Origin: Scyliorhinus canicula
Lineage: Eukaryota
Length of the DNA: 64,000 nt
Assembly: GCF_902713615.1 (NCBI RefSeq)
Contig: NW_024055494.1
Coordinates: 1-64,000 of the forward strand
Direction of reading: 5' to 3'
Shown here: piece after piece, positions 1,970 through 61,019 of the stretch
Layout of the letters: each line of letters starts with the position of its first letter
Position numbering within the stretch: position 1 is the stretch's first letter
Translations under genes and position numbers: made by a program
The notes under the pieces: model-generated
Told to the model about the DNA's origin: nothing
What the model saw: the letters and a program-made list of their open reading frames with translations, nothing else
The model's database searches: none

Positions 1970-2180
1970 TCTCCTGGAGTTTGAGACAAAGCAGCTTTCA
2001 AAATGATGCAGGGTTTCAGCCAATGAGGGAGATCCGGGCTCAGCCCAGCCCCTCATTCACTCTGATTGGTTGGAGGACCGGCTTCTGCCGCTCGGTCCTC
2101 CAGCCGCGCCCCCTCTTCCTATTGGTCAGGAGCTGCCGTCAATCAACCGGGCATTGTGATGGAGAGCATGCGCAGTGCGG
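1970..2180 (+). promoter_or_regulatory. ZNF-cassette promoter module, copy 1
   Basis: CCAAT 2020, ATTGG 2065 and 2121, CCGTCAATCA 2136, inverted repeat 2071-2102, GCATGCGCA (NRF1-like); about 600 bp upstream of the acceptor of ZNF-A. Confidence 0.7.
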
Positions 2181-2898
2181 GTAGGAGCTGGGCTCGGCAA
2201 TCGCGGATCTCCGGAGCTGATGAGAAACTGCGCGGTGAGACGAGAGGGATGGAGCCGGCGGGTGGGTTGGATATGAGGGCTTCCCAAACACCCGCAGTAC
2301 GCTCCAAACCCCCAATATGAAGCTCAAATTCCTGCCTTTGCCTCCGAATGAGAAATCGCTGAGTTCGTTGCCGCCATTTTCGTAGGGGCGAGGCTCAGCC
2401 AGGCGCATGCGTAGTCGCCATTTTTGTAGGTGGCAATCTCTGGTCAAACAGCCAATGAGGGACCTTCCGGTACCTGCCCCGCTGCTGCGAGACCGGCTTC
2501 CAACACACATTGTGATTGGTCGGAGGACCTGATAACCTATTAGTCCTCCAATCCCGCCCCTTCGCAATCCAAACAGAAACTGATTGAATTGGGGATGAAT
2601 GATCTCTGCTTCACCCCCTGACTCTCCCACCATCTCCCCTGTCTGTTTCCTACTCCCTCACCTTGGTCACTCTTTCCCAGTGTCAATCCCACAAATTATC
2701 AGATTCATTCAACTCGATGTGTTTTATTTCTTTCTGTTTTTGTGGGTTCTCTCTCACTCCCTTATTTCTGTTTTAAATCAATCTCACAGGGTATAGTAAA
2801 GACAGGATTTGCAATCGGGAAAGAGAAACTAATCCAAACATCATATCAGGATCTGACAGACTCAATTCATCAGGAGTGACGATCACCAGCCTTCGAAC

Positions 2899-3767
2899 AT
2901 GGCAGCAAAAATTACTATTCACCCAGGGACAAAACCGTGTAAATGTGGGGACTGTGGGAAGAGATTCAGTTACCCGTCTGAGCTGGAAATTCATCGGCGC
3001 AATCACACCGGGGAGAGGCCATTCACCTGTTCCGGCTGTGGGAAGGGATTCACTAGTTTCTCTTCCCTGCAGAAACACCAGCCTGTTCACGCTGACAAGA
3101 GGGAGTTTAAATGCTCCGACTGTGAAAAGAGATTTAAAAGCCTAAATGTACTGCGGATGCACCAGCGCATCCACACTGTGGACAGGCCATTCAGCTGCTC
3201 ACAATGCGGGAAGAGGTTCAGGGCATCATCTGACCTGCTGATGCACCAGCGAGTTCACAGTGACAAGAGACCTTTCAAATGTCCGGAATGCGAAAAGTGC
3301 TATAAAAGGTCAGAGGAACTGCGGCGCCATCAACTTGTTCACACTGATGAGAGACCGTTCAGATGTTCTCAATGTGGGCATGGTTCAGGCGATCAGCTGA
3401 CCTTGTTCGACATCAGCGCACTCACTCTGGGGAGAAGCCTTTCACCTGTTCTGAATGTGGGAAGGGATTTGCTCAGTTATCACACTGGCGAACACACCAG
3501 CAAGTTCATACTGAAGAGAGACCTTTTAAATGTCCAGACTGTAGGAAGTGCTTTAAAAGTTCAGAGAAACTGCGGATCCATCAACGTGTTCACTCTGACA
3601 AGAGACCGTTCAGGTGCCCTCACTGCGGAACTGGGTTCAAGCAATCAGGCAACCTCATTATACACCAACGCACTCACACTGGGGAGAGGCCTTTCATCTG
3701 CTCAGAGTGTGAGAAGGGATTCATTTGTTTATCCAACCTTATGAGACATCGGCGAGTTCATCAATGA
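2899..3767 (+). pseudogene. C2H2 zinc-finger gene ZNF-A, 10 fingers, single -1 frameshift in finger 6 (pseudogene or assembly error)
   Basis: ORFs 2899-3744 and 3363-3767 join into 10 tandem fingers if one G is added at 3382-3383; acceptor ...tcacag at 2788-2789. Confidence 0.85.
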
Positions 3768-4284
3768 TGCAGAGTTTAGATTCTGACAGCTGGGGTTTAT
3801 TTCTGATGTCATTTTCACCCATTAGACTTATCCTATACTCCACACCATGCTTCATTCATATCGCAATAGACCATTATAGCTGTAAACATCCTTTTAAAAT
3901 TTAAATCTCTTAGTAACTGTATTGAACTAAAGATGAACAAGAAACAGATCCCAGTCCAATCCTGCAGCTCCATATTGACAGGAGAAAGTTTGTTCTGTAA
4001 CTTGAGGTTGAGGTGGTAAACTCTGAATGTTGGTAATCTCATCTGTAGGCTTCTTAGACATGCTGTTAACTTCTCAGATGTTAAAGGGATCACTCTTAAA
4101 GTATACTCACCAATTTATAACCTGACACTGGACCCTGCTGTAACTAATAGCATCCATTTGTGATGATTTACAGTGAAAATCCTGTGGAATCTTTGTTCCT
4201 TGTTTTATGAAATAGCTCCCTCCGTTAGTGCTGAAATTCTGGATAACTCTGATTACGTTCAGATATGTTTAGTCTATGGAAAAT

Positions 4285-4555
4285 TTTGTGGCTCAAGCGT
4301 CCCTACCTCTGAGCCAGAAGCTCTGGATTTGAATCCCACCCCAGGATGTGATGGCCAAGGAAGGAACGTTTGTAACACAATCAAACAGGTTTAGTGTCAA
4401 CCTCCAAAATTCTCCCAAAACCTGCCAATGGCTGGCGGTAAGAGTGGGAGAGAGTCCTGGTCAGCCATGCTTGATGTGGAGTGGCACCCCTCAAGCTATA
4501 AGCCTCTGGCGATACACTAGCGAGTTGCTTCTGGAATAATTAGCTATGAAAACAG
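4285..4555 (+). mobile_element. Probable old tRNA-derived SINE (distinct family)
   Basis: tRNA-like head gtggctcaagcgtcc..ggatttgaatccc (box B-like); single copy in the window. Confidence 0.35.
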
Positions 4556-4729
4556 ATTAACAGATAACAGAAGAGAATTGGAATAAATGGTCTGTGTGCT
4601 CAGATTTAATTGTAATGTGTAACCAATGGACAAGTCAGTCTGTCCTGACTTGTACTCTGGTGTCTTGGCGATTTGTGAAGATTTAATTCACTCACTCAAC
4701 AGCTTGAGAGGAATCACACTGAGGTTTCA

Positions 4730-5885: not shown

Positions 5886-5892
5886 TGAAATC

Positions 5893-6662: not shown

Positions 6663-6717
6663 AACAGGTTCTAGCATTTGCCAACTACAGATGTCAGACT
6701 CGATTTCCCATTTTATC

Positions 6718-8612: not shown

Positions 8613-9287
8613 TCACTCGTGAAGTCTCTGGTGTCTCAGCAGATTGGATGACCAAGTAAATCTCTTCCCACACACAGAACAGTTGAACGGCCTCTCCCCG
8701 GTGTGAGTGCGTTGGTGTTTCAGCAGATCAGATGTAGTTTTATAGCTCTTCTCACAGTCAGAACATTTAAACGGTCTCTGATCACTGTGCACAAGTTGAT
8801 GTGCAGCAAGGTTCCATACGTGAAGGAATCTCTTCCCACACTCGGAGCAGGTGAACGATCTCTCTCCAGTGTGAACTCTCTGGTGTCTCTGCAGGTTAGA
8901 TAAATGATTAAATCTCTCCCCACACACAGAGCAAGGGAATAGCCTCTCCCCCGTATGACCTTGTTGGTGTGTGAGCAGGTTGGCTGACTGAGTGAATCCC
9001 TTCCCACACTCGGAGCAGATGAATGGCTTCTCCCCGGTGTGAACACGTTGGTGTCTCAGCAGATCCATTTCGCTTTTGAAGCTCTTCTCACAGTCAGAGC
9101 ATTTAAGAGATCTCTTATTACTGTGTACAAGTTGATGTTTCAGAAGGTGTGCTGACTGAGTAAATCCCTTTCCACACAGAGAGCAGGTGAACGGTCTCTC
9201 TCCAGTGTGACTGCGTTGATGAGCTTCCAGCAGGGATGGAGATTTGAACCCCTTCCCACAGTCTCCACATTTCCACCGTTTCTCCAT
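8613..9287 (-). CDS. C2H2 zinc-finger protein ZNF-B, 8 fingers, no effector domain
   Basis: 224-aa [17 protein letters not shown].. with TGERPF linkers; acceptor ttttacag at about 9615; degenerate fingers at 9290-9530 in the same exon. Confidence 0.9.
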
Positions 9288-9820
9288 GGTGCCGATGTCC
9301 TTGTGTCTCTCCAGGTTGGAGTCTCATCCACACACAAAACACTTGTACGGTTTCTCCCGACTGTGAATGGTGTGATGTTTTTCCAGGTTGTGTAACTGGT
9401 TCAGGCTCCACAGTCAGTTCACTGGAACATTCACTCAGGTGTGTGTGTCTCAGTGCTTTTCCAGTCACACTGATGTTTGAAATCTTTTCCCACAGATAGA
9501 ACAGACAAAGATTTCTCCTTCCACATTGAGGGGTTGATGATATTCATATCCTGACAAATCAAAAGGCTCTCTAATCTTGAGTTTGATGTCTGCAAATGTT
9601 TCCATTCTAATACCCTGTAAAAGGAGATTAAATAGAATGATACTCAATATACAGCAACAGGTAATTGTGCCCAGTGTCAGTGCCAATGGGTCTATCGCTT
9701 CTCTCAGCAGGTCTTTCTATTCCTTTCTCTCTCGTGTCTGCAACTTGTTAAGTGCATTCATGTTTTTTTCCTCAACTCGTCCCTGTGGCAGCAAGTTCCA
9801 CACCCTCCGGAAAAAGACAA

Positions 9821-18837: not shown

Positions 18838-19699
18838 ATTCAAAATCCAAAGATATTCAGGTTACGATAAATTGGACGACTCAATCAGATCCTGATGTGA
18901 TATTTGGTTTCAGTTTCCAAACTGCAAATTGTCCCTTTCTAATACCCTGTGAAATTGATTAAAAATAGAAAATGGTGTAAGAGCAAACCTACAAACAGAC
19001 AAGGGCAGGTTGTAAAACTGAGCCGAATGAATCTGGTCACTTGTGGGGCCAGCACGAGGAATAAGTGACCATAAAAACTGCTGGATTGTTGTAAAAACCA
19101 AACTGGTTCAGTGATGTTGTTCAGGGTAGGGAACCTGCCAAACTTGAGTTCATCCAAATATCTGCTACCATGTCCTCTGAACTGTGTCCCACTCACTCAT
19201 CACCCCTGTTCTCACTGACCTACTGGCCCCGGTTAAGTAACATCCTGGTTTGCAAATCTTGCTCCACCCTATTTCCAGCTGCACAAATGTTTAAATCTTT
19301 AACCTTCTGTAAAACAGAAACACTTACATTTGGGTACTGATGAACTAAGTGACTCTCAGTGTTTGAAGTGAATCTTGGGTGAGTTTTCCACCTTAAAATT
19401 CTGCTCTTCTAATGTCCTGTAAAAAGTCATCACTGTCAGTGCAGGATTAAAAATTCAGAAGAGAAAAATATTTCTCTTGGTTTGAGTTTACTGTGTGTAA
19501 ATCCTCCCCTTCTAACCCCCCTGTAAAAGGAGTTTCCAGAACCCAACACTGTCAGTCCAGGAGAGAAATTCGCAACATTCTCTCCTCCTGCTGTCAGGAC
19601 AGGGTGCACTGCACAGGCGCACTGTCCCCTCCCCAAACAAATGGGTCCAGTCTCCCGGATGTTGCCCCGCAGGATTGAACATTAGATTCTTAATCTTAT

Positions 19700-21684: not shown

Positions 21685-22036
21685 TAATAATAATAATCTT
21701 TATTATTGTCACAAGTAGGCTTATAGGAATACTGCAATTAAGATACTGTGAAAATCTCCTAGTCGCCACATTTCAGCCCCTGTTCGGGCATAGATAGAAT
21801 TTACAGTGCAGGAGGCCATTCGGCCCATCGAGTCTGCACCGGCTCTTGGAAAGAGCACCCTACCCAAGGTCAACACCTCCACCCTATCCCCAAAACCCAG
21901 TAACCCCACCCAACACGAAGGGCAATTTTGGACACTAAGGGCAATTTATCATGGCCAATCCACCTACTATACAGAGGGAGAATTCAGAATGTCCAATTCA
22001 CCTAACAAGCATGTCTTTCGGGACTTGTGGGAGGAA
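21685..22036 (-). mobile_element. SINE A3 fragment with a nested A1 3' part (about 21790-21966)
   Basis: A3 tail split by an A1 tail. Confidence 0.7.
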
Positions 22037-22099
22037 CATACCCCAATGAATATGGTTCAGTCCAAGCTGCGATTCCCAAAACAATCCAGTCACTGAAGT

Positions 22100-23080
<981 letters not shown>

Positions 23081-23296
23081 AATCCAAAGGTATTCAATTT
23101 ACGATAAATTCGGTGGGTGTTAGATGCTGATACGATGTTTAGTTTGTGTTTCCTAACTGCAAATCCTCCCTTTCCAAGACCAACTATATTAACAGCTATA
23201 ACTGAGCTGGAGGTATTTTTCAATTCAGCAGAAACAGACTCAAATGAAGATAGTTCAATCCTGAATATGATTAACAGCATAATCCAATCATAACAG

Positions 23297-23908
23297 TTAC
23301 TTGTGAATTTGTTGGTGTTTCAGCAGGTTGGATGACTGACTGAATCCCATCCCACACACTGAGCAGGTGAATGGCCTCTCCCCGGTGTGAATGTATCGAT
23401 GTGCAAGTAGGTGGGATGATTGTGTGAATCCCTTCCCACATTGGGAGCAGATGAATGGCCTCTCCCCAGTGTGAACTCGCTCGTGTGTCCGCAGGGTATA
23501 TGAGTGAGCAAATGTCTTCCCAAAATGGGAGCAGGTGAACGGCTTCTCCCCACTGTGAACTCGCTGGTGTAATGCCAGGTTGGTTGACCAATTGAATCCC
23601 AACCCACACACAGTGCACATGAATGTCCTCTCCTGAGTGTGAATTTGCTGGTGTCTCAGTAGAGTGAATGTGTGACCAAATCCCTTCCCACACTGGGAGC
23701 AGGTGAATGGCTTCTCCCCAGTGTGGCTGCATCGATGAGTTTCCAGCTGGCATAGGAAATTGAATCCCTTTTCACAGTCACCACATTTCCAAGGCATCGC
23801 CCTGTCGTGACTGCAATTATGTTCCAAAAATCCAGATGATTGGTTGAAATCTTGTCCACACACAGGGCACAGCTTCCCCCCACTGTAGTCGGTGCTTTTT
23901 CCTTCCAT
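23297..23908 (-). CDS. C2H2 zinc-finger protein ZNF-E, 7 fingers (finger 5 Cys to Phe)
   Basis: 203-aa ORF MEGKSTDYSGGKLCPVCG..; conserved acceptor near 24018. Confidence 0.85.
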   Translation of the reverse strand: MEGKSTDYSGGKLCPVCGQDFNQSSGFLEHNCSHDRAMPWKCGDCEKGFNFLCQLETHRCSHTGEKPFTCSQCGKGFGHTFTLLRHQQIHTQERTFMCTVCGLGFNWSTNLALHQRVHSGEKPFTCSHFGKTFAHSYTLRTHERVHTGERPFICSQCGKGFTQSSHLLAHRYIHTGERPFTCSVCGMGFSQSSNLLKHQQIHK

Positions 23909-24214
23909 GTTCCAAATCCAATGATGTTCAGGTTACAATAAATTGGCTGTCTCCATCAGATTCTGATATCATGTTCGATGTCAGTTCCCCAATTGCAAAG
24001 CCTCCCCTTGTAATACCCTGTGAAATTGATTTAAAACAGAAAAATGGGAGTGAGAGAGAACCCACAAAAACACAAAGGCAGGTTGTGAAATTGATATGAA
24101 TCGATCTGGTAATTTGTGGGGCCGGCAAAGGGAAAAAGTGACCTTGAAAACTACTGGATTGGCATAGAAACCCAACTGGTTCACCTCTACTGGAGTAGAG
24201 AGAGAGTGAAAGGG

Positions 24215-24662: not shown

Positions 24663-24979
24663 GATATATTTTTTTTAATACTCCTCCGGGTCATTGGACA
24701 TTTGCCCCCCACAATGATGGCGATCACGCATGCGCCCTGATGCACATGGCGTCTATTAAATATGGCGGCCGATAACACGGGCTGAACGGGAGGATCTGCA
24801 GTCCCGCTCGGTACAAACTGGGTGGTCCAGTAAGCTCTTTTCAGAGGTTTGTGGCTCACACAACATATTTAGGCAGCGTTTCCGTAGAGTCACGTGATTC
24901 CTCGCGCCGTCCGTACTTACCAATTACGGAGTTGAAGAAGCCACCCTCTGTCGCCATTACGCACACTTCAATCACAGCG

Positions 24980-25115
24980 GGCCACGCCCCTCATTCACCC
25001 CGATTGGTTGGAGGACCAGCCGCTCTGTTGGTCCTCCAAGCCCGCCCCTCATCCTCCTATTGGGCGGGAGCTGCCGTCAATCACCCGGGCATTGTGACGG
25101 TTACAAATGCGCAGA
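24980..25115 (+). promoter_or_regulatory. ZNF-cassette promoter module, copy 2
   Basis: GC box, ATTGG, inverted repeat 25008-25039, ATTGG-N10-CCGTCAATCA, ATGCGCA. Confidence 0.7.
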
Positions 25116-25452
25116 AAATTGAGTCTCCAGATAAAACCTGCTGATGGCCACAAGCTGAGAATAAAAACCTGCTGGTCCCAAATTTGCTGGTCTGGGGCTT
25201 TTTCCCCGGGAACAGTCACAGGCTAATGGCTGCCATCTTGGTTCAGGGAGGAGCAGAGTTGTGAGGGAACAGGGAGTGGGTGGGGCTTCAGGGTCTCAGC
25301 GACTGGGAGAGAAAATTATTGAGTCGTTAACTTCACTCTCAGTCTGCACACTGGTTAGAACTGAACTGAGCCAGAGTAGACGATGGAGGAAAACTGGGAG
25401 TGGAGGAAAGGAATGGTGGAGATGGGACAATGAGTTGATAATAATCTTTACA

Positions 25453-26354: not shown

Positions 26355-26545
26355 GATCAGAATGTTACAGGCCTTTGAATGTGGAAGGAGCAATGTTAAG
26401 TCTATTCTGCCCATGGAAAAGATTTCAAATATTATTGTAACTGGAAACGTGCCGATACACATACGCTCAAGTGAGTGTTCCAGTGAACTGACTGTGAAAA
26501 GAGCTTCACCCAGTTACACAGCCTGCAGAACGATCATACATAGAG
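26355..26545 (+). pseudogene. Orphan ZNF leader-exon remnant (fossil fingers only)
   Basis: LNVEG..KRFQILL*LE..VFQ*TDCEKSFTQLHSL, homologous to 9360-9540 and 38770-38960; no finger array follows. Confidence 0.7.
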
Positions 26546-27974: not shown

Positions 27975-28668
27975 TTGCCTGTGAACTTGCTGATGTCTGA
28001 GCAGGTTGTTTGACTGAGTGAATCTCCTTCCACACGCGGAGCAGTTGAACAGCCTCTACCAGTGACTCCCCAGTAACGTTTCCATGTGTGGGCAGCATGG
28101 TAGCTCAATGGATAGCACTGTTGCTTCACAGCTCCAAGGTCCCAGGTTCAGTTCCCGGCTTTGGTCACTGTCTGCACGGAGTCTGCACGTTCTCCCTGTG
28201 CCTGCGTGGGTTTCCATCGGGTGGTCTGGTTTCCTCCCAGTCAAAAGATGTGCAGGTTAGGTGGATTTTCCAGGCTAAATTGCCCTTAGTGTCCAAAAAT
28301 GTTAGGTGGGGTTACGGAGTTATGGTGGAGGTGTGGGCTCAAGTAGGGTGCACTTTCCAAGGGCCGGTGCAGACTCAATGGACCGAGTGGCTCCTTCTGC
28401 ATTGCAAATTCTATTATTCTGTTTCAGTGTGAAGTCGCTGGTGTTTCAGCAGATTCGGTTTACTTTTAAATGTCTTTTCACACTCACAACATTTAAAAGG
28501 TTTCTGATCAGTGTGAACAAGTTGGTGTGTAGTCAGGTGGGATGACTGAGTGAATTTCTTGTCACACACGGGGCAAGAGTACGGTCTCTGTCCAGTGTGG
28601 ACTCGCTGGTGTTGCAGCAGGTTGGATGAATCATTGAATTCCTGCCGACACATAGGGCAGCTGAACGG
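27975..28668 (-). pseudogene. Out-of-ORF 3' fingers (9-12) of ZNF-F
   Basis: Three intact in-frame fingers after the TGA at 28671-28669, then a SINE insert, then a last finger CSACGRRFTQSNNLLRHQQVH. Confidence 0.8.
28090..28420 (+). mobile_element. HE1-like SINE A1 inserted in the ZNF-F array
   Basis: Full-length copy. Confidence 0.85.
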
Positions 28669-29349
28669 TCACTCCCCAGTGTGAACTCGATGGTGTCTCA
28701 GAAGGTGGGCTGACCGAGTGAATCCCTTCCCACATTTGGAGCAGGTGAATGGCCTCTCCCCAGTGTGAACGCGTTGGTGTTTCAGAAGATCCCTTTTGCT
28801 TTTAAATGTTTTCTCACAGTCAGAACAATTAAAAGGTCTCTGATCAGTGTGAACAGATTGATGAGTCAGAAGCTGGGATGAACAAGTGAATCCCTTCCCA
28901 CACACAGAGCAGGTGAACGGCCTCTCCCCAGTGTGAGTGCGTTGATGTATCATTAAACATTTTTTACTTTTAAAGCTCTTCTCACAGTCAGAACATTTAA
29001 AAGATCTCTTGTCAGTGTGAACACGTTGGTGTGTCCGGAGGTTCGATGTCTGAGTGAATCCCCTCCCACACATGGAGCAGGTGAACGGCCTCTCCCCAGT
29101 GTGACTGCGTTGGTGGAACAATAAATCCTTTCTGCTTTTAAAGCTCTTCTCACAGTCAGCACATTTAAACGGTCTCTGGTCAGTATGAACATGCTGGTGT
29201 GTGATGAGGTTGGATAATGTAGTGGATCCCTTCCCACAAACGGAGCAGGTGAACGGCCTTTCCCCAGTGTGAATACGTCGATGAGTTTCCAATTCAGACG
29301 GGGATTTGAATCCTTTTCCACAGTCCCCACATTTCCATGGTTTCTCCAT
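28669..29349 (-). CDS. C2H2 zinc-finger protein ZNF-F, 8 fingers before a premature TGA
   Basis: [23 protein letters not shown]..; alternating finger types; ends TGE*. Confidence 0.8.
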
Positions 29350-29357
29350 GGTTATCG

Positions 29358-29472
29358 ACAAGTTATCAGGTGTAGGTGGGATGCAGATTTTAGGTCACTA
29401 TCAGATCAGCAGTGATGTTATTAAATGGTGGAACAGGCTCATGGGGCTGAATGTCCAATTGCTGCTTCTTGA
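29358..29472 (+). mobile_element. CR1 3' tail inserted immediately upstream of the ZNF-F ATG
   Basis: agatcagcagtgatgttattaaatggtggaacaggctcatggggctgaatg matches the CR1 tails elsewhere. Confidence 0.65.
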
Positions 29473-30127
29473 TTGCTGTCGTGCGAATGTCCTTATGTCT
29501 CTCCAACTTGCATCATCAGTTGAAGTCTGAGTACGGTGTCTCTCTGATGTAAATGCTGCAATTTCATTTCATGCTGTGTGATTGGTTAAAGCTCAGTTCC
29601 AGCTAACTGTGGAAAATTACTGAGATGTATGTGTCTTGGTGCTTTTCCAATCAAAGTGATTTTTATCATTTTTCCCCAAAGACAAAACAAACATTTCTCC
29701 TTCCATGTCGAAAGGCCGGTCCTGATGAATCAAGGGTCTCTGTGAGATCTTGACATGATGTTTGCATCTGCAAATATTCTGCAAAAGGTCATTGCATTGA
29801 ATTACTGTGAATATATTAAGACACAAACAGGCCATTCTGTCACAGATTCTGCTGCTGTCCATACTTGGCACAAATTTCCTACTGTCCCACCTATCTCATC
29901 TTTCCATGGTAATGAGTTGCACATTCTAAACCTGTAAGTAAATAAATTTGTCCGTATTGCCCCCTTTGATTTATTCGTAACTATCTTGGATTTATGACTC
30001 GTCGTTTATTGATCGTACCCGGTTTTAGACTCTCTCCCATCACCCCTCTCCAAACTACTGATAATTTACAAGATTTCTATCAGGTCACTGCTTACTTCCT
30101 TGTTTTCAATAGAGAAAAATAAAATGG

Positions 30128-30297
30128 ATGAAATGAAAATCACTTATTGTCACGAGTAGGCTTCAATTAAGTTACTGTGAAAAGCCGCTATTCACCACAT
30201 TCAGGCGCCTGTCCGGGGAGGCTGGTACGGGAATCGAACCGTACTGCTGGCCTGCTTTAAAAGCCAGCGATTTAGCCCAGTGAGCTAAACCAGCCCC
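30128..30297 (-). mobile_element. SINE family B
   Basis: Similar to 5407-5586. Confidence 0.85.
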
Positions 30298-30924
30298 TCT
30301 CCCACTCCACTCCATAATGCCCCACTCCATATAATATTTCCTGATCACTGTAATCTCTCATTTTACAAAAGTAAATGCAGGATAGAATTTGCAAAGAGAC
30401 AAATCTTTCTGTTGGGTTTAGTTTTTTGTGTAAATTCCCTACTTCTAACTCCCTGGAAAAGGAGTTTACAAAAGCCACCACTATCAGTCCAGGATAGAAA
30501 TTCTGAACAGGCAATTCTAGTTTCTCTGGAACATTTTTTTCTCTCGTTCCCCCAAAACTGTAAATCCCCGTCCCACACACTCTCCCTCCTCCCTGGGCTG
30601 AAATCCAAACCCATCTCTTTCCTCCCTGCCTCCCCTCTGTCTGGGTTCAGTTCTCCAGCTCCTGTTTGCAGACTGACAATAAAATCAATTGGTTTGGGGC
30701 CTTCAGCGGATGTTGGTGAATCCTCCCCGCCCACCTGACAGGGTTTCCTTCCTTGCCAGAGATCAGTGTCGTCATTGATTTGAGTGCAAAGTCTGAACTC
30801 TTATTTATTATCCCCCCTCCCCCATCCTGTGATGTGAACCACCCTCCAGTGTGGGAAGAAGGATGGTGCCCGTTAACCTGGGACTACAAACCAGGGAGCT
30901 GACAATGATTGTGACGAGGTTGCT

Positions 30925-38545: not shown

Positions 38546-39045
38546 GAGATAGGAGGGAAGGTGTTGGGATGGAGATCTAGAGCTTTTGGGGAATAAGAGA
38601 GAGGAAAAAATATGACATAGAAACTAGAATTGTCTGTTCTAAGTTTTTATCCTGTACTGACTGTGATGAATTTTGTCAATTGTTTTCACAGGATATTAGA
38701 TGAGGAATTACAGACAGAAATCTCAAATGTTGCGTCTCGTTCTGACAGTCAGTACTTTTATTGGAACCTGAATATCATTGGCCTTTGAATCAAGAAGAAC
38801 TATTTGTCCAAACTGTCAGCTAAAGATTTCAAACATCAGTGTTACTGGAAAAGCACCGAGACCCACACAACACACACCCAAGTAAGAGAGTTTCAGTGAA
38901 CTAACTGTAGAAAGAGCTTCAACCAATTACATGGTGTGAAGAACATCACACCATTCATAGCGGAGAGAGACCATACCCGTACTGTGTATGTGGAAGAGGC
39001 TTCAACTGATTGTCCAACCTGGAGAGACACAAGGAGACCCAAAAC

Positions 39046-40080
39046 ATGGAGAAACCATGGAAATGTGGGGACTGTGGGAAGGGATTCCGAGTCCCATCTG
39101 TGCTGGAGGTTCATCGACGCAGTCACACTGGGGAGAGGCCGTTCACCTGCTCTCAGTGTGGGAAGGCATTTACTCAGTTATCCAACCTGCAGAAACACCA
39201 GCGAGTTCACACTGGGGAGAGGCCACCTTACTGCTCTCAGTGTGGGAAAGGATTCTGTGATTCTTCCCTCCTATTGAGACATCAGCGAGTTCACACTGGG
39301 GACAGGCCGTTCATTTGCTCTCAGTGTGGGAAAGGATTTGCTGAAGTATCCAAACTGCAGAAACACCAGCGAGTTCACACTGGGGAGAGGCCATTCACCT
39401 GTTCTCAGTGTGGGAAGGGATTCACTCAGTCATCCACCCTGCAGACACACCAGCGAGTTCACACTGGGGAGAGGCCATTCACCTGCTCTCACTGTGGGAA
39501 TGGATTTACTCAGTTATCTCACCTGCTGACACACCAGCGAGTTCACACTGGGGAGAGGCCATTCACTTGCTTACAGTGTGGGAAGGAATTCACTCGGTTA
39601 TCACACCTGCAGTCACACCAGCGGGTTCACACTGGGGAGAGACCGTTCACCTGCTCTCAGTGTGGCAAGGAATTCACTCGGTTATCTCACCTGCAGAGAC
39701 ACCAGCAAGTTCACACTGGGGAGCGGCCATTCACCTGCTCTCCATGTGGGAAGAGATTCACTCGGTTATCTCACCTGCAGACACACCAGCGAGTTCACAC
39801 TGGGGAGAGGCCATTCACCTGCCCTCAGTGTAGGAAGGGATTCACTCAATTATCCAGCCTGCAGACACACCAGCGAATTCACACTGGGGAGAGCCCATTC
39901 ACCTGCCCTCAGTGTGAGAAAGGGTTCCGTGATTCATCCAACCTGCGGAGACATCAGCAAGTTCACACTGGGGAGAAGCCATTCTCATGCTCTCAGTGCG
40001 GGAAGGGATTCACTCGGCTATTCAACCTGCAGTCACACCAGCAAATTCACACTGGGGAGAGACCATTCAGCTGCTCTTAG
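39046..40080 (+). CDS. C2H2 zinc-finger protein ZNF-G, 12 fingers, highly homogeneous 84-bp repeat
   Basis: [23 protein letters not shown]..; ends CS* (TAG where paralogous fingers have CAG) with 1-2 decayed fingers after; acceptor ttcacag near 38691. Confidence 0.9.
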
Positions 40081-40667
40081 TGTGGTCATGGATTCAGTCA
40101 TTCATCCACCCTGCGGACACACCAGCGAGTTCACACTGAGGAGACACCGTCCACCTCTCAACGTGAGAAGGGATTACATGTTTCATCAGACCTGCTGTGA
40201 CACCAACAATTTCACAATTGATTACAGGGGTTGGATTCTGCTGTTATTGTTTCTGCTCTGCACCCAGGACAGCATTTTGTTCATTCTGACAGGTGGTCAG
40301 TGGGGATGGTCGGAGGGTTTCTTTCTGCTGGACTAGGCGGTCTCACCACTTTGCCTCCAGTTGGCTGATTCTCTTTGAACCTTGTTACTAATACCTGGCT
40401 TCAAATTGCACAAGGATCACAGAGTGAAAGGGTGTTTGGAAGTGTGGAGATATTTAGTTTCCATTTCTGTTTGGAACCACGCAAAGCATGCCGCATTGCC
40501 GTGGAGATGGGCCCTGGTTGTTACATGGTTCTTTTGTTTAATTTATCTGGGTGTTCCGCACAGAAGAAAACTATCAGGGTTACGAGGGGCAAGTTGTTTG
40601 AGGTGGACTGGGAGACTGATTGGTACGGGGAATACCTAATATTTAAGGAATTATTACATATTTATCA

Positions 40668-47610: not shown

Positions 47611-48341
47611 GCAGATGGTTGGCCTCTCCCCAGTATGAATACACTGCTGTCTCAGAAGGGTGTATGTCTAATTGACTCTACTCCCACACTCGGAGAATGA
47701 GATGGCCTCTTCCCAGAGTGAGTGCAATGGTGAATTTGAGGTGAGATGTTTGCCTGAATCCAGTCCCACAGTGAGAGCACCTGAACTCACTCACATCCGT
47801 GAACACGTCAATGGGAGATAAAGTTCCTCGGAAAGTGTACAGCACTTCCGCAGTCTGGGCATTTAATAGGTCACTCATCAGTGTGAACTGCCTGATGTCT
47901 CACCAGGTTGGACAAGTGAGCAAATCCCATCCTACACTTGGAACAGGTGAATGGCCTCTCCCCAGTGTGAAGTCGCTGGTGGATCAGCAGGTAGGATGAA
48001 TGAGTGAATTGTTTTCCACGCACAGAACAACTGAATGGTTTCTCCCCAGTGTGAACTTGCTGGTGTATCCACAATTGGAATGACTGAATAAATCCCTTCC
48101 CACACTCAGAGCAAGAGAACGGCCTCTCCCCAGTGTGAATGCACCGATGTATCAGCAGTTGGGATGACTGACTAAATCTCTTCCAACATTCAGAGCAGGT
48201 GAATGGCCTCTGCCCAGTCTGAATTCACTGGTGTCTGAAGGCAGGATGCGATACTGAATCCTTTCCCACATTCAGAGCAGGTGAATGGACTCTCGGCAGC
48301 GTGACTGTGATGTACAGTGAGGTCAGATGAATGCCTAAACC

Positions 48342-48529
48342 TACTGTCTGTCTGTGCGGAGTCTGCATGTTCTCCCCGTGTCTGCGTGGGTTTCCTCCGG
48401 GTGTTCCGGTTTCCTCCCACAAGTCCCATTACGTACTTTGGACAGTCTGAATTCTCCCTCATTATACCCGACCAGGTGCTGGAATGTAGCGACCAGGGGC
48501 TTTTCACAGTAACTTCATTGCAGTGTTAA
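48342..48529 (+). mobile_element. 5'-truncated SINE A3 in the ZNF-H tail
   Basis: Core and ttttcacagtaacttcattgcagtgttaa tail. Confidence 0.75.
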
Positions 48530-48654
48530 CAATTCCCACAATCTGGACATTTAAAAGGTCTCATCAGTGTGAACCTTCTGGTGTGTCAGTAAATGTGATG
48601 AACAAGTGAATCCCTTCCCACACTCACAGCAGGTGAATGGCCTCTCTCAGTGCA

Positions 48655-49080
48655 AGTGCCCTGATGTACAGTAAGGTCAGTCCAAAGAAGTGCAGGTTAG
48701 GTGGATTGGCCATGTTAAATTGCTCTTAGTGACCAAAATAAAAGGTTAGAAGGGGTTATTGGGTTACAGGGATAGGGTGGAAGTGAGGGCTTAAGTGGGT
48801 CGGTGCAGACTCAATGGGCCGAATGGCCTCCTTCTGCACTGTATGTTCTATGTGAGTGCCCTGATGTACAGTAAGGTCAGTCCAAAGAAGTGCAGGTTAG
48901 GTGGATTGGCCATGTTAAATTGCCCTTAGTGACCAAAATAAAAGGTTAGAAGGGGTTATTGGGTTACAGGGATAGGGTGGAAGTGAGGGCTTAAGTGGGT
49001 CGGTGCAGACTCAATGGGCCGAATGGCCTCCTTCTGCACTGTATGTTCTATGTGAGTGCCCTGATGTACAGTGAGGTCAG
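48655..49080 (+). repeat. 200-bp tandem duplication of a truncated A1 SINE bounded by three 26-bp TSD copies
   Basis: agtgccctgatgtacagt(a/g)aggtcag at 48655, 48855 and 49055. Confidence 0.9.
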
Positions 49081-49155
49081 ATGATCGTTTAAACCCAGTC
49101 CCAATGGGAGAGCAGCTGAATGGTCCTTCATCAGTGTGAATACGTTGACGTGACT

Positions 49156-49830
49156 TCAGTTCCCAGGAGCTTCGACAGTACTTCCCACAGTCCAGGCATT
49201 TAACGGTGTCTCCCCATTGTGAATCCGCTGGTGTCTCAACAGATTGGATGACTGAGTGAATCCTTTCCCACAATGAGGGCAGGTGAATGGCTTCTCTCTG
49301 GTGTGAATTCGCTGGTGAACCAGCATAGCTGATGCACAAGTGAACCCCTTCCCACACTTGGAGCAAGTGAATGGCTTCTCCCCAGTGTGAATGCGTTGGT
49401 GTGTCCGCAGTTGGGATGGGGTAATAAATCCTTTCATACAGTTAGAGCAGGTGAATGGTCTCTCCCCGGTGTGAACTCGCTGGTGTTGAGTGAGGTTAAA
49501 TGATCGCCTGAACCCAGTCCCACAGTGAGAGCATCTGAACGGTTTCTCGTCAGTGTGAACACGTTGATGGGACTTCAGATCCCCAGAACTTTTATAGCTC
49601 TTCCCGCAGTCTGGGCATTTAAAAGGTCTCTCATCAGTGTGAATCCGCTGGTGTCTCAGCAGGTTGGATGACTGAATGAATCCTTTCCCACACTGAGAGC
49701 AGGTGAACGGTCTCTCCCCAGTGTGACTGCGCTGATGTTTTAACAGGTCAGATGATTGTCTGAATCCTCGTCCACACACAGAACACGTGAACGGTTTCTC
49801 CTCACTGTGAACAGTGCTTTTCTCTTCCAT
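49156..49830 (-). CDS. C2H2 zinc-finger protein ZNF-H, 7 intact fingers then a frameshift
   Basis: [20 protein letters not shown]..; frameshift in the linker after finger 7. Confidence 0.75.
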
Positions 49831-50129
49831 GTTCAAAATCTGATGATATTCAGGTGATGATTATTGGCTACTTTTCCAATGTCCTGTCAAACTGATTTAA
49901 AACAGAAAAAAGGGAGTGAGAGAGAACCCACAAAAACACAAAGAGAGAGAGCGATGTGGAGCAGCAGGGTTGAAGGGGATGAAGTTTATACAGCTACAAC
50001 TCGACAAAAGTCTGCCAACCCTCAACATGTACCACCCAAAAGGACTGGGATAGCAGGTATATATTAATAATAATAATCTTCCATATTGAACATCGTCATC
50101 TTGTGTTTCCCCTCCAGGTAACATACCGT

Positions 50130-53233: not shown

Positions 53234-53244
53234 AATTTGAATGT

Positions 53245-53585: not shown

Positions 53586-53779
53586 CCAGAAAGGTGGCGT
53601 CAACTAAGGCCTATCACGAGAAGTTGTGACCCTGTTCGGTGCAAATATGGGGACGGAGAAGTTATTTCTCATGGTTTCATCTTGAAAAGGATGTTTTGAT
53701 GCCTCTCCACCAACCTGGCAGATCTGTCCTCCCGGAGCACCGTCAACTCCCCCCGGAACCGATCACGGACCCGAGACAA

Positions 53780-53950
53780 CTCAGCCCCGCCCCTCATTGT
53801 CTCTGATTGGCTGGAGGACCAGCCTCTCCCACTCGGTCCTCCAGACCCGCCCCCACTTTCTGTTGATCGCGAATCGCCGTCAATCATTCCCAGGGAGCTG
53901 GAGCATGCGTGGTGCAGCTGCCAGGGCTGAACATAATTGCGCATGCGCGG
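53780..53950 (+). promoter_or_regulatory. ZNF-cassette promoter module, copy 5
   Basis: GC box, ATTGG, inverted repeat 53811-53844, CCGTCAATCA, GCGCATGCGC. Confidence 0.7.
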
Positions 53951-54820: not shown

Positions 54821-55029
54821 ATATAAAAATATTGAAAATGGGATAAAGGTCGTTTGGCTGACGGTCAATCACTGTCCTGTGAGGTAATGAGTCATTTTGC
54901 TTCCCAATTGGCTGAGGAAGGCAGTGTGTCACAAGGATGGATGTGTTGACCGATTAATGGCTGGAGGATGGGGCAGGTCATGTGATCAACCCTCCAGGAA
55001 TACATTTAATCAAAGTTGGCGAGGAGAGA

Positions 55030-55278
55030 ATGTTGTGAATTTCTATCCTAAACTGACAATGAGGTTCCTGTAAATTTGCAGGATACTGGAAGTGGAGGTT
55101 TAACAGACGGGAAACACAAACCAAACGTCACATCGCGATCTGACACAGTCACTCGATTCATCAGAACCTGAATTTCAGCAGCATCTGGGTGTGGAAGGTA
55201 AAAGTTTGTCTGATCTGTCTGTGAGGGAAGATTTCAGGTCTCTGTGTGACTGGAAAAGCCCCGAGATTCACAAACCCT
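55030..55278 (+). pseudogene. Orphan ZNF acceptor and leader remnant, truncated by CR1
   Basis: tttgcag acceptor, ..SVCEGRFQVSV*LEKPRDSQT, homologous to the other leaders. Confidence 0.65.
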
Positions 55279-56680: not shown

Positions 56681-57085
56681 CAGAAGCATAGTTTTGGTAT
56701 CAGTATTACTGTTTATGAAGCTCAAGGTCGAATTTGCTTTGCCATCTATTCTCTTTAATATGACTCGCAGATATACAAAATCCCTCTACACCTCTTTCTC
56801 TCTCCTCCCAAAGAGGCCAGTTGGGTTTTATAACAATCCAGCAGTTTTCATGGTCACTTTTTCCCAGTGTAGACCCCACAAATGACCAGATTCATTCAGC
56901 TCAATTTCACAACCTGCCTTTGTGTTTTTGTGGGTTCTCTCTCACTCCCTATTTTCTGTTTTCAATCATTTTCACAGGGTGTTCGAAGGGGAGGCTTCAA
57001 AGTCCGGAAACTCAAACCAAGCATCACATCAGGATCTGACTGAGTCCTCAATTTATCATATCCTGAATATCAATGTACTTTGAAC

Positions 57086-57955
57086 ATGGAAGGAAAAAGC
57101 ATTGTTCACAGTGGGGAGAAACCGTACACGTGTTGTGTGTGTGGACGAGGATTCAGTCAATCATCAGGCCTCACAAGCCACAAATGCAGTCACACTGAGG
57201 AGAAACCGTGGAAATGTGCGGACTGTGGGAAAGAATTTAGTTCCCCATCCAAGCTGGAAACTCATCGACGCAGTCACACTGGGGAGAGGCCATTCACCTG
57301 CTCCAAGTGTGGGAAGGGATTCACACAGTCATTCGACCTGCGGAAACACCAGAGAGTTCACACTGGGGAGAGACCATTCACATGCTCCAAGTGGGGGAAG
57401 GGATTCACTCAGTCATCCACTTTGTCCATACACCAGCGAATTCACACTGGGGAGAGACCATTCACCTGTTCAGAGTGTGGGAAAGGATTCACTAAGTCAT
57501 CCCACCTGCTGAGACACCAGCGAGTTCACACTGGGGAGAGACCATTCACGTGCTCCAAGTGTGGGAAGGGATTCACTAAGTTATCTTCCCTGCTGAGTCA
57601 CCAGCGAATTCACACTGGGGAAAGACCGTTCACGTGCTCCAAATGTGGGAAGGGATTCACTGAGTCATCCACTCTGTCCACACACCAGCGAGTTCACACT
57701 GATGTGAGACCGTTTCAATGTCCAGACTGTGGTAAGTGCTATAAAAGTTCCGGGGAACTGATGAACCATCAACGTGTTCACACTGATGAGAAACCGTTCA
57801 GGTGCTCTCACTGTGGGACTGGGTTCAGACAATCATCTAACCTCATTGTACATCAACGAATTCACACTGGGGAGAGGCCATACACCTGTGTCAAGTGTGG
57901 GAAGGGATTCACCACTTCATCCAACCTGCTGACACACCAACGAGGCCACAAGTAA
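57086..57955 (+). CDS. C2H2 zinc-finger protein ZNF-I, 10 fingers (finger 4 Cys to Trp)
   Basis: [20 protein letters not shown]..; acceptor ttcacag near 56977; in-frame TGA at 57041. Confidence 0.9.
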
Positions 57956-58714: not shown

Positions 58715-59030
58715 CAAACAGAATCTCACCCGGAGAGAAAGACAGACAATCCGGGAGCTTGGATCCAACACGGATATGTTCATAAGACCAGAAGACAAGG
58801 GTAGCAGCACAGTCATTATCGAGAGACAACAATACCTGCTGGCGACAGACAACTAAACAACATGAATCACAACACCAAGCTACCTAGACCCATATACCCC
58901 AGACAGGACGGAGAATTGGAGACAGACTGGAAGAACTCAGACTCCAGACACATTAACCAAAAACAGATGGAATATCCGAGGGGACAACAGGTAGAATAAA
59001 GGAAGTTCAACCAGCTCCCTAAAGTACCCA
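58715..59030 (+). mobile_element. Penelope RT N-terminal fragment
   Basis: QNLTRRERQTIRELGSNTDMFIRPEDKGSSTVIIERQQY (NL..E..L..N..I.IKPADKG motif). Confidence 0.7.
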
Positions 59031-59034
59031 AACA

Positions 59035-60130
59035 TATAATAATATTCTTTGTTATTGCCACAAGTAGGCTTACATTAACATTGCAATGAAGTTACCGTGA
59101 AAAGCCCCTAGTCACCACAATCCTGTTTGGGTGTACAGAGGGATAATTCAAAATGTCCAAATCACCTAACAAGCACATCTTTCGGGACTTGTGGGAGGAA
59201 ACCGGAGCACCCGGAGGAAACCCACGCAGACAAGGAGCGAACGTGCAGACACCGCACAGACCGTGACCCAAACACGAATTGAACGAGGAATCCTGGCGCT
59301 GTGAAGCAACAGTGCTAACCACTGTGCTACCGTCGGAAATACCGGCAAACAGACACATCGGATCAGACTGTGAGAGAGAAAATCCTCCAGAATCAGAGAA
59401 TTTACAATGCAAAAGGAGGCCATTCCACCCATTGAGACTGCATCAGCCCTTGGAAAAGCACCCTATTTAAGAGCATGCCTCCACCCTATCCCCGTAACCC
59501 AGTAATTCCACCTAACCTTTGTTTGGACACTAACGGGCAATTTCGATTGGTCAATCCACGCAACCTGCACATCTTTGGAGAAAATTGGAGCACCCGGAGG
59601 GAACTCATACAGTCACGGGGAGAATGTACAAACTCCACACAAACACCCAAGGCCGGAATAGCTGAAATATCAACACACTGCTCCTGGTAGTTCATGCGAC
59701 AGTGGTTCAATAAATATAATTAATGGATCAAAAAGGTGTGTAATATAGAATAAAAACAGAAAATGCGAGATTAACTCAACAGATCTGGCAGCATCATTGA
59801 ATCCCTACATTGCAGAAGGAGGCCATTCGTCCCATCGAGTTTGCACCAATCCTACAAAAGAGCACCCCACCCAGGCTCAAACTCTCTTGCCCTATCCCCG
59901 TAACCCAACTTCACCTTTGGACACTAAGGGGCAATTTAGCACAGCCAATCCACCAAACCTGCACATCTTTGGACGGTGGGAGAAAACTGCAGCACCCAGA
60001 GGGAACCCACACAGACACGGGGAGAATGTGCAAACTCCACACAGTCACACCAGGCTGGAATTGAACCCAGGTCGCTGGTGCGGCAATGCTAACCACTGTG
60101 CAATGCAGCAGTGCTAATCACTGTGCCCCC
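59035..60130 (-). mobile_element. SINE cluster (A3 59035-59333, A1 59395-59660, A1 59797-60130)
   Basis: Similarity to the other copies. Confidence 0.75.
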
Positions 60131-60294
60131 ATGCCACATCTGTGGCGAATGAAACAGAGTTAACGTTTGTTGTTCCTTGTAGCAGTTCTGTAGAAGGCTC
60201 AATGGACTCTAAAAATAAATTGTTTTATTCAAGTTTGACTCAGGAAGAAGTTTCAGTCTGTGTGAAGCTCAATATTCAATCACACAAAACCCGC

Positions 60295-60595
60295 AGACTG
60301 ATTGGATGGAGGACCAGAGTCCATCCGGTCCTCCAAGTCTTCAATTGGTCAACACCTCTCAGGCAGGAAATGAGATTCTGGAACCCACGCCACGTGGCCA
60401 ATGGGAAGAAAAAATGATGCAGACTCTCAGCCAATGAGGGAGGTCCACGATCACCCCCGCCCCTCATTCACTCTGATTGGTTGGCGAACCAGCCGCTCCT
60501 GCTCGGTCCTCCAGTTTCCCTCTCTTCCTATTGGTCCGGAGCTGCCGTCAATCATTCCCCGGGTATTGTGATGTTGAGCATGCGCAGTGCAACTA
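60295..60595 (+). promoter_or_regulatory. ZNF-cassette promoter module, copy 6, preceded by a partial copy
   Basis: Inverted repeat 60307-60335; CCAAT, ATTGG, ATTGG-N10-CCGTCAATCA, GCATGCGCA. Confidence 0.7.
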
Positions 60596-61019
60596 ATGTC
60601 CAGGGACAGACGCTTGTTTCTCTCATCGTTAGGCGGGAAGGAGGCGGATAGGCGGAGGCAGCGTTAGGGGCAGTGGGTGGGAGGGGAGGCTTCACACACA
60701 CCCAGTGGCCTCAAAGCTAAAACAAGAAATTACCACTCCCAAGTTTGCACCGAGGGAAGGTTTTCCTGTAGAGCCTTTCTCCAGTTAACCACCGCCATCC
60801 TCGCAGGGGGCAGTGTGCAGCAGGGCGCATGCGCGGTGATCCCTGTCCACTCAGCAGAACTGACAGTGATGGATTCTGGAAACTCCTTTTACAGGAGGTT
60901 AGAAGGGGAGGATTTAAACACAGCAAAGTGAAATCAAACAAGGCATTAAGACCTGAACTTCTGTTTTGAACCAAATGTATTGACAATTTTTATATGATGC
61001 AGAACAAGGCCAGCAGTGT

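What the first reader, a model, noticed from the sequence alone, without database searches (positions are those of the whole stretch)
1970..60960. Cassette-built, effector-less zinc-finger gene family in a TE-dense shark locus (candidate analogue of KRAB-ZNF defence)
Seen: nine finger arrays and two orphan leaders in 64 kb, each built from homologous promoter, leader, acceptor and 3' UTR parts, with varied recognition helices and frequent gene death. In ZNF-A, B, C, E, G, H and I an in-frame stop lies shortly upstream of the ATG within the same exon (for example TGA 2854, TGA 39007, TGA 57041), so a KRAB, SCAN or BTB exon cannot splice in frame through the visible acceptor. Known: clustered birth-and-death ZNF families (tetrapod KRAB-ZNFs, cyprinid FiNZ-ZNFs) repress transposons through an N-terminal domain. 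Inference: this is a chondrichthyan family doing a similar job with fingers only.
Basis: partly seen in the sequence, partly recalled or inferred. Interest (0 to 1): 0.75.

Follow-up and report, generated by a model that had tools for sequence, protein, structure and literature searches.

The report
Catshark fingers-only zinc-finger gene cluster
A transposon-rich stretch of catshark DNA holds about nine duplicated zinc-finger genes (four intact, the rest broken) from a shark-and-ray family that encodes DNA-binding fingers and nothing else; the cluster is real but of a familiar kind, and its proposed role in silencing jumping genes is untested.

Summary
The observation largely holds. The window carries 82 C2H2 fingers in nine arrays. 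Six copies of a CCAAT/GC-box promoter module are present.

Corrections:
- Array G is the broken 3' end of H.
- D is two units, D1 intact and D2 dead.
- B, C and F have no promoter copy.
- There are three orphan leaders, not two.

The ORFs start 4-15 residues before the first finger and stop 1-3 residues after the last. I found no KRAB or SCAN exon and no other conserved upstream coding exon. The leader shows no codon-like substitution pattern. RefSeq models in five other sharks start at the same two methionines.

The family is marked by a constant head finger (W-x-CGDCGK-x-F-x2-P-x2-LE-x-H-x-RSH) that I found only in sharks and rays. DNA-contact residues evolve at dN/dS about 1.0, against about 0.3 for the rest of the finger.

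So this is an elasmobranch finger-only ZNF cluster evolving by birth and death. Repression of transposons is plausible by analogy but nothing here tests it. Earlier notes of this scan describe the same family on other pieces of this genome.

The parts
2031..2178 (+). Promoter module P, copy 1 (CCAAT boxes, GC boxes, CATGCGCA site, central dyad). A donor-like GGGTGGGT follows at about 2260.
   Evidence: nhmmer E=6.6e-44; alignment A1; dyad; donor
2790..3767 (+). ZNF-A finger exon. Acceptor CAG ends at 2789, last in-frame stop TGA at 2854, ATG at 2899. Five fingers, then a frameshift between 3342 and 3447, then four more fingers in another frame. Broken gene.
8613..9629 (-). ZNF-B, short form. 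Acceptor/leader at 9576-9629, decayed upstream fingers with stops at 9288-9560, intact CDS at 8613-9287 (224 aa, 8 fingers, starts MEKRWKC).
   Evidence: exact product on record in GCA_902713615.2
17968..18946 (-). ZNF-C, long form. Exon starts at about 18946, leader has 2 in-frame stops, intact CDS at 17968-18837 (289 aa).
   Evidence: exact product on record
19373..19589 (-). Two extra acceptor/leader copies (module X) upstream of ZNF-C.
22032..23181 (-). ZNF-D2, a dead partial duplicate. Its leader has no acceptor and is fused about 130 nt after the D1 stop. Stops lie inside fingers and a SINE is inserted at 22259-22598.
23297..24017 (-). ZNF-D1, long form. Exon starts at about 24017, leader has 3 in-frame stops, intact CDS at 23297-23908 (203 aa).
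24969..25117 (+). Promoter module P, copy 2. It lies head-to-head with D1 and points at the orphan short-form leader at 26378-26539.
26378..26539 (+). Orphan decayed-finger leader (short-form type) with no array behind it.
   Evidence: blastn matches to 9370-9527 and 38822-38951
27975..30521 (-). ZNF-E, short form. Acceptor/leader at 30402-30521, decayed leader fingers at 29531-29705, CDS at 28669-29349 (8 fingers). A premature stop is followed by 3-4 decayed fingers and a SINE at 28090-28420.
30911..31399 (-). Promoter module P, copies 3 and 4 (30911-31055 and 31249-31399), in tandem upstream of ZNF-E. Donor-like site at about 31176.
38623..40230 (+). ZNF-F, short form. Acceptor/leader at 38623-38727, decayed fingers with stops (TGA 39007), CDS at 39046-40080 (344 aa, 12 fingers). 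A stop lies inside finger 13; the original end was near 40225.
47799..49883 (-). Exon starts at about 49883, CDS at 49156-49830 (7 fingers). Then come a frameshift, a SINE plus a 200-bp duplication at 48655-49080, and decayed fingers at 47799-48631.
53772..53915 (+). Promoter module P, copy 5. It lies head-to-head with H and points at the dead leader at 55019-55276 and at ZNF-I. Donor-like site at about 53999.
55019..55276 (+). Orphan acceptor/leader with a decayed first finger.
56978..57955 (+). ZNF-I, long form. Exon starts at 56978, single in-frame TGA at 57041, intact CDS at 57086-57955 (289 aa).
60442..60947 (+). Orphan unit: promoter module P copy 6 (60442-60590), donor-like site at about 60676, acceptor/leader copy at 60855-60947, no array.

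Best explanation
This is a tandem cluster of two-exon genes from a C2H2 zinc-finger family restricted to sharks and rays. The genome is most likely that of the small-spotted catshark.

Shown:
- A short non-coding first exon follows a CpG-enriched promoter that carries CCAAT and GC boxes and a CATGCGCA site.
- That exon would splice to one large exon holding a ~110-nt untranslated leader, an ATG in good Kozak context, and the whole reading frame.
- The protein is 6-12 fingers with only 4-15 residues before them and 1-3 after.
- There are two subtypes. The long form starts MEGKS and has two constant head fingers. The short form has lost the first part and starts MEKPWKC at the second head finger.
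- Copies arise by local duplication, sometimes as head-to-head units around one promoter. They die by frameshifts, stops and SINE insertion.
- The finger scaffold is under purifying selection, while the DNA-contact residues change about as fast as silent sites.

Inferred: the proteins bind DNA sequence-specifically, and their targets turn over. The constant head finger or fingers most likely supply the function common to all members, such as a partner contact or an anchor. Transposons are the most plausible targets, by analogy with KRAB-ZNFs and FiNZ-ZNFs. I give transposon silencing roughly one chance in three.
For: - Arrays and ORF limits.
- Shared acceptor, leader and in-frame stops.
- ATG context GAACATGG or ACCATGG.
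- No codon-type substitution pattern in the leader. Differences per codon position are 0.316, 0.345 and 0.243.
- Pfam finds only C2H2-type families in ZNF-I.
- No KRAB or SCAN match when 26 KRAB/SCAN-type N-termini are searched by tblastn.
- Shark RefSeq models start at the same Met: P0015, P0124 and P0135 with MEGKS; P0006, P0069, P0147, P0161, P0188 and P0250 with MEKPWKC.
- The head-finger signature occurs in 15 of 184 retrieved proteins (14 named, all elasmobranch; one unnamed ENA record). It also occurs in 8 of the top 150 hits of an unbiased library search, all sharks.
- The head finger is 75% identical among paralogs, against 49-61% for later fingers.
- dN/dS is 0.86-1.06 at contact residues and 0.31-0.35 elsewhere.
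- Six promoter copies carry conserved donor-like sites.
- Two of them sit head-to-head with a long-form gene.
- A published phylogeny infers that KRAB-ZNFs arose in bony vertebrates, with only PRDM9 in a shark (PMC11603059).
Against: - There is no transcript, translation or binding evidence of any kind.
- Exon joins are inferred from motif conservation and from gene models in other species. Some of those models simply take the longest ORF: P0038, P0132, P0134 and P0126 read through the leader.
- B, C and F have no recognisable promoter in the window.
- Only four of nine units are intact, so most of this particular locus may be inert.
- Stingray relatives (P0050, P0052) are modelled with ~200-residue N-terminal extensions that are weakly similar to each other. 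An ancestral N-terminal region therefore cannot be excluded.
- The dN/dS estimate uses non-independent finger pairs chosen by identity.
Confidence: 0.8

Rival explanations
1. The family is a true functional analogue of KRAB-ZNFs. Each member targets a transposon family through its variable fingers. Silencing is recruited through the constant head fingers, or by simple occupancy of the site, with no separate effector domain.
For: - Birth-and-death cluster in repeat-rich DNA.
- Contact residues evolve at dN/dS about 1 while the scaffold is at about 0.3.
- The head finger is conserved across sharks and rays.
- ZNF numbers track TE load across animals in general (PMC10547256).
Against: - Nothing here links any member to any TE.
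- Contact-residue dN/dS of about 1 fits relaxed constraint as well as an arms race.
- Paralogs are not very young (dS 0.2-0.8).
- The main text of that metazoan survey does not mention sharks or cartilaginous fishes.
Confidence: 0.3
2. An effector domain exists but was missed. It could be encoded by a diverged or distant upstream exon joined through another acceptor, or supplied in trans by a partner protein.
For: - Some paralogs and orthologues have an open leader in the finger frame (P0038, P0132, P0134, P0126).
- Stingray models have long N-termini.
- B, C and F lack a nearby promoter, so their first exons are unknown.
Against: - In-frame stops follow the only conserved acceptor in A, B, C, D1, E, F, H and I.
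- The leader shows no coding-type substitution pattern.
- No upstream ORF is shared between paralogs apart from the promoter, leader and SINE copies.
- The read-through extensions in other species carry no Pfam domain.
- Part of the P0050 N-terminus matches a region at 43548-43772 of the window, and its sequence looks like LINE reverse transcriptase (my reading of the motif).
Confidence: 0.1
3. The locus is essentially a pseudogene graveyard. The family works elsewhere in the genome, and these copies are decaying duplicates with no present function.
For: - Five of nine units are frameshifted, truncated or interrupted by a SINE.
- There are three orphan leaders.
- B, C and F have no promoter module.
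Against: - B, C, D1 and I keep full ORFs of 203-289 aa with intact Cys/His ligands in most fingers.
- The scaffold dN/dS of about 0.3 shows past purifying selection.
Confidence: 0.2

Closest known systems
Tetrapod KRAB-zinc-finger gene clusters
   Same: - Tandem clusters of poly-C2H2 genes with TGE(K/R)P linkers.
- All fingers on one large last exon.
- Birth-and-death turnover.
- Fastest change at helix positions -1, 3 and 6.
- Location in repeat-rich DNA.
   Different: - No KRAB A/B exon and no N-terminal domain of any kind.
- The protein starts 4-15 residues before the first finger.
- The upstream exon is non-coding.
- One or two constant head fingers mark the family.
- No evidence for a TRIM28-type partner.
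Cyprinid FiNZ-ZNFs (Wells et al. 2023, PMC10547256)
   Same: A lineage-restricted, clustered and highly duplicated ZNF family in a fish lineage that lacks KRAB-ZNFs.
   Different: FiNZ genes are defined by a conserved N-terminal FiNZ domain. Their early-embryo expression and TE de-repression on knock-down have been measured. Here there is no N-terminal domain and no functional data.
Finger-only poly-ZNF proteins (OZF/ZNF146, ZNF239, ZFP2, Xenopus XlCGF 'gastrula zinc finger' proteins)
   Same: The whole protein is a finger array. NCBI names the shark relatives after these proteins: 'OZF-like', 'ZNF239-like', 'ZFP2-like', 'XlCGF-like'.
   Different: Those names come from generic finger similarity, not orthology. 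The elasmobranch family has its own head-finger signature, leader and promoter module, and it occurs in large tandem clusters.
The same family noted on other pieces of this genome by this scan (s1-240154, s1-236521, s1-200271, s1-253617, s1-213844)
   Same: Finger-only genes, a constant first finger, a shared CCAAT-type promoter island, head-to-head units, and many dead copies.
   Different: In this window the head-to-head unit is visible only twice (D1/orphan and H/orphan). It is disrupted by TE insertions, and several genes have no promoter copy.

Membership tests
KRAB-ZNF | N-terminal KRAB A (and B) box encoded on upstream exons | tested here: not met
   - tblastn of 24 KRAB-bearing N-termini hits only finger arrays.
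- Pfam on ZNF-I finds only C2H2-type families.
- In-frame stops follow the acceptor.
- No elasmobranch hit carries PF01352.
KRAB-ZNF | Tandem C2H2 array with canonical linkers on one exon, with the genes in tandem clusters | tested here: met
   82 fingers in nine arrays within 64 kb; linker consensus TGERP
KRAB-ZNF | Recruitment of TRIM28/KAP1 and H3K9me3 silencing of TEs | not testable with these tools
   Needs protein interaction and chromatin assays
FiNZ-ZNF | Conserved N-terminal FiNZ domain before the fingers | tested here: not met
   The ORFs have only 4-15 residues before the first finger. No conserved upstream coding exon is present. No FiNZ profile was available, so this rests on architecture.
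SCAN- or BTB-ZNF | N-terminal SCAN or BTB domain | tested here: not met
   Two SCAN N-termini give no hit outside the arrays. No BTB or SCAN family appears in Pfam for ZNF-I. BTB was not searched across the six frames of the whole window.
Elasmobranch head-finger, finger-only ZNF family (unnamed) | Head finger W-x-C-G-D/E-C-G-K-x-F/Y-x2-P-x2-L-E-x-H-x-R-S-H as the first or second finger | tested here: met
   - Present in A, B, C, D1, E, F and I; absent from H.
- Present in Scyliorhinus, Cetorhinus, Heterodontus, Chiloscyllium, Mustelus, Pristiophorus, Carcharodon and Hemitrygon proteins.
- Absent from every non-elasmobranch protein retrieved.
- The pattern was written from these same sequences, so the test is partly circular.
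Elasmobranch head-finger, finger-only ZNF family (unnamed) | Translation start at MEGKS (long form) or MEKPWKC (short form), and a stop 1-3 residues after the last finger | tested here: met
   Window ORFs and RefSeq models in other sharks
Elasmobranch head-finger, finger-only ZNF family (unnamed) | Shared CCAAT/GC-box promoter island, partly used head-to-head | tested here: inconclusive
   There are six copies. Two lie between a long-form gene and a short-form leader. B, C and F have none, and two-way use is not shown.

The most novel reading that the evidence does not exclude
Sharks and rays run a large TE-surveillance system built from finger-only proteins. In this reading the one or two constant head fingers, rather than a separate KRAB-like domain, recruit the silencing machinery. 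That would be an independent, domain-free solution to the task that KRAB-ZNFs perform in tetrapods.
Probability: 0.15. Interest if true: 0.65.

Novelty: new member of a known kind. Interest (0 to 1): 0.35.

Why it matters
Lineage-specific expansions of tandem zinc-finger genes are known across animals. They are linked to transposon control in tetrapods (KRAB) and in carp-like fishes (FiNZ). Cartilaginous fishes have very repeat-rich genomes, and according to a published phylogeny they have no KRAB-ZNFs. A large family there, defined by its own head finger, leader and promoter, would be the obvious candidate for the equivalent system.

In six literature searches (five on this question) I found no paper describing it. 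The value of this window is a clean anatomy: start codons, exon structure, two subtypes and the signature finger. That anatomy makes the hypothesis testable. It does not show any function.

Tried and rejected
- **KRAB/SCAN exons.** tblastn of 26 N-termini taken from retrieved KRAB- or SCAN-ZNFs gave only degenerate-finger hits inside the arrays.
- **Stingray N-terminal extensions** (P0050, P0052), skate PRDM9-like P0094 and the S. torazame read-through N-terminus against the window. Nothing matched except the leader itself and one region (43548-43772) that I read as a LINE reverse-transcriptase fragment.
- **Leader as a decayed coding region.** Rejected for these paralogs, because there is no excess of third-position change. 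It remains open for the deep ancestor.
- **Pfam on ORFs** in and around the promoter copies and other long ORFs. Only the LINE endonuclease and RT matched.
- **Rfam on the whole window.** No family reached threshold, so the SINEs stay unclassified.
- **Transcript evidence through the look-up of encoding contigs.** Products B, C and F are on record only in the genome assembly, I and H are not on record, and no DNA was returned for any place, including the ENA contig of P0143.
- **Profile search of the 70-residue N-terminal module** against 1.84 billion representatives. The ranking was swamped by very long poly-ZNF proteins (166,915 hits). It was useful only after filtering by the signature.
- **Literature.** No paper on an elasmobranch ZNF family turned up. 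The metazoan ZNF/TE survey does not mention sharks in its main text.


Full report
**What is in the window**

A pattern scan of all six frames finds 82 C-x2-C-x12-H-x3-4-H motifs. They fall into nine blocks that match the long ORFs: A 2899-3767+, B 8613-9287-, C 17968-18837-, D 22632-23908-, E 27981-29349-, F 39046-40134+, G 47799-48631-, H 49156-49830- and I 57086-57955+. The window has no N.

The exact products of B and C are on record on one record of NCBI assembly GCA_902713615.2. The nearest named proteins come from Scyliorhinus canicula and S. torazame, at 83-90% identity. The DNA is therefore catshark. That the accession belongs to S. canicula is from my memory.

**Gene anatomy**

Upstream of the first finger, A, C, D1, H and I share a polypyrimidine tract ending in CAG. 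About 110 nt of homologous leader follow, then an ATG in the context GAACATGG.

In the finger frame the leader carries stops in every copy.

B, E and F have the same acceptor and leader further upstream (9576-9629, 30402-30521, 38623-38727). In these three the ancestral ATG is mutated and the first fingers are decayed and full of stops. Translation would then start at a second ATG (ACCATGG) that gives MEKPWKC.

So there are two subtypes. The long form (C, D1, H, I) starts MEGKS. The short form (B, E, F, and A with a variant start) begins at what is finger 2 of the long form.

All ORFs stop 1-3 residues after the last histidine. About 50-130 nt of 3' UTR (TAACTG..TGATTGGATT.TGCTGTT) is shared by B, C, D1, E, F and I.

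**Promoter module**

A ~150-bp module occurs six times at E of 1e-35 or better: 2031-2178+, 24969-25117+, 30911-31055-, 31249-31399-, 53772-53915+ and 60442-60590+. It carries:
- several CCAAT/ATTGG boxes;
- GC boxes;
- a CATGCGCA site;
- a central dyad, TGGAGGACC-N12-14-GGTCCTCCA.

The copies are GC-richer and CpG-richer than the window: GC 0.54-0.61 and CpG o/e 0.55-0.74, against 0.47 and 0.44. In four copies a conserved GGTGGGT donor-like site lies about 85 nt downstream. This fits a short non-coding first exon.

The copies are placed as follows:
- One copy each precedes A and the I region, and two tandem copies precede E.
- Two copies sit head-to-head with a long-form gene (D1 and H) and point at a short-form leader that has lost its array (26378-26539 and 55019-55276).
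- One copy heads an orphan leader (60855-60947).
- B, C and F have no copy.

**Corrections to the gene count**

G has no leader. The sequence just upstream of its first finger is the end of an H finger (…LTVHQGT) followed by a linker. It is separated from the rest of H by a SINE and a 200-bp unit repeated 2.1 times at 99% identity. So G is the dead tail of H.

D is two units. D1 is intact (203 aa). D2 (22032-23181) has a leader with no acceptor that follows the D1 stop by about 130 nt. It also has stops inside fingers and a SINE at 22259-22598.

State of each unit:
- Intact: B (224 aa), C (289), D1 (203) and I (289).
- Truncated by a stop: E and F.
- Broken by a frameshift: A and H.
- Dead: D2.

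**Is an effector domain hidden somewhere?**

- Pfam finds only C2H2-type families in ZNF-I.
- N-termini of 24 KRAB-bearing and 2 SCAN-bearing ZNFs returned by the first search hit nothing outside the arrays.
- The N-terminal extensions of two stingray relatives have no counterpart in the window.
- Apart from the promoter, leader and SINE copies, nothing upstream is shared between paralogs.
- The leader shows no third-position excess of substitutions. Differences per codon position are 0.316, 0.345 and 0.243. It does not evolve like coding sequence.
- Independent gene models in other sharks start at the same two methionines: Cetorhinus P0015, P0124 and P0135; Pristiophorus P0006; Mustelus P0069; Chiloscyllium P0147; Heterodontus P0188, P0208 and P0248-P0250.
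- A few models read through an open leader (P0038, P0132, P0134, P0126), but the added residues carry no domain.
- A published tree places the origin of KRAB-ZNFs in bony vertebrates, with only PRDM9 in a shark (PMC11603059).

The finger-only reading is well supported. No RNA data back it.

**Family identity**

The finger that opens the short form and is second in the long form is unusually constant. Its pattern is W-x-CGDCGK-x-F-x2-P-x2-LE-x-H-x-RSH, and mean pairwise identity among seven paralogs is 0.75, against 0.49-0.61 for the next five fingers.

A pattern for it matches 15 of 184 proteins retrieved by three word-indexed searches. Fourteen are named shark or stingray proteins and one is an unnamed ENA record. 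It also matches 8 of the top 150 hits of an index-free profile search of 1.84 billion representatives. All 8 are from Carcharodon or Heterodontus.

The pattern was derived from these sequences, so the test is partly circular. Even so, none of the many bony-fish, amphibian, mammal or invertebrate hits carries it.

**Evolutionary mode**

- Entropy across 68 intact fingers peaks at helix positions -1, 3 and 6.
- For finger pairs in three identity bands, dN/dS is 0.86-1.06 at the four contact codons and 0.31-0.35 elsewhere.
- The pairs are not independent, and a value near 1 fits relaxed constraint as well as diversifying selection.
- At least 34% of non-array bases have another copy inside the window.
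- One LINE has endonuclease and RT ORFs.
- SINEs have landed inside three arrays.

**What this means**

The cluster is a real member of an elasmobranch finger-only ZNF family that evolves by birth and death. Nothing here tests whether it represses transposons. The analogy with KRAB-ZNFs and FiNZ-ZNFs (PMC10547256) is reasonable but unsupported by data. Proximity to TEs carries little information in a genome this repeat-rich.

The most interesting open point is the constant head finger or fingers. They could be the family's shared functional module, so 'effector-less' may be the wrong word.

Earlier notes of this scan describe the same family on other pieces of this genome, including the constant first finger and head-to-head units. 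I checked both of those points on this window and they hold in part.

Noticed in passing
31997-34849 (+); also 52539-53235 (-) and 36499-36775: A LINE with endonuclease and reverse-transcriptase ORFs (Pfam PF03372, PF00078). Its 3' end recurs at 91% identity between ZNF-H and promoter copy 5.
   Followed up: partly
5408-5585, 7632-7808, 16251-16426, 17275-17450, 30117-30296, 35397-35577, 50689-50809, 54355-54513, 62790-62978: A ~180-bp SINE-like family with at least nine copies at 82-97% identity. A second, ~300-bp family (for example 6434-7045) has more than 20 copies. Neither matches an Rfam family.
   Followed up: partly
48655-49080: A 200-bp unit repeated 2.1 times at 99% identity, made of SINE plus the flanking finger. 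It lies inside the dead tail of ZNF-H and is much younger than the gene duplicates.
   Followed up: partly
47341-47608: A 70-72-bp tandem repeat (3-4 copies, 88-92% matches) containing (CA)n, at the end of the decayed G/H array.
   Followed up: no
54596-54803: A G-rich low-complexity tract (GGGT/GGGGAGT units; 21-bp unit repeated 5.9 times) between promoter copy 5 and ZNF-I.
   Followed up: no
13500-16200: A 2.7-kb stretch with strongly negative GC skew (-0.22 to -0.51). It is possibly a minus-strand LINE. The ORFs there have no Pfam match.
   Followed up: no
39046-40080 (ZNF-F): The exact F product is on record on a 4.9-Mb record of GCA_902713615.2, whereas B and C are on a 577-kb record. This means either an identical second copy or redundancy in the assembly.
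   Followed up: no
2068-2105, 53811-53844 and the other promoter copies: The promoter module has a conserved dyad at its centre: TGGAGGACC, a 12-14-nt spacer, then GGTCCTCCA. It may be a factor site relevant to two-way promoter use.
   Followed up: partly
8655-9210 and 28677-29283: In the short-form genes B and E the array has a 168-bp (two-finger) period. A '[12 protein letters not shown]' finger type alternates with a '[13 protein letters not shown]' type.
   Followed up: no
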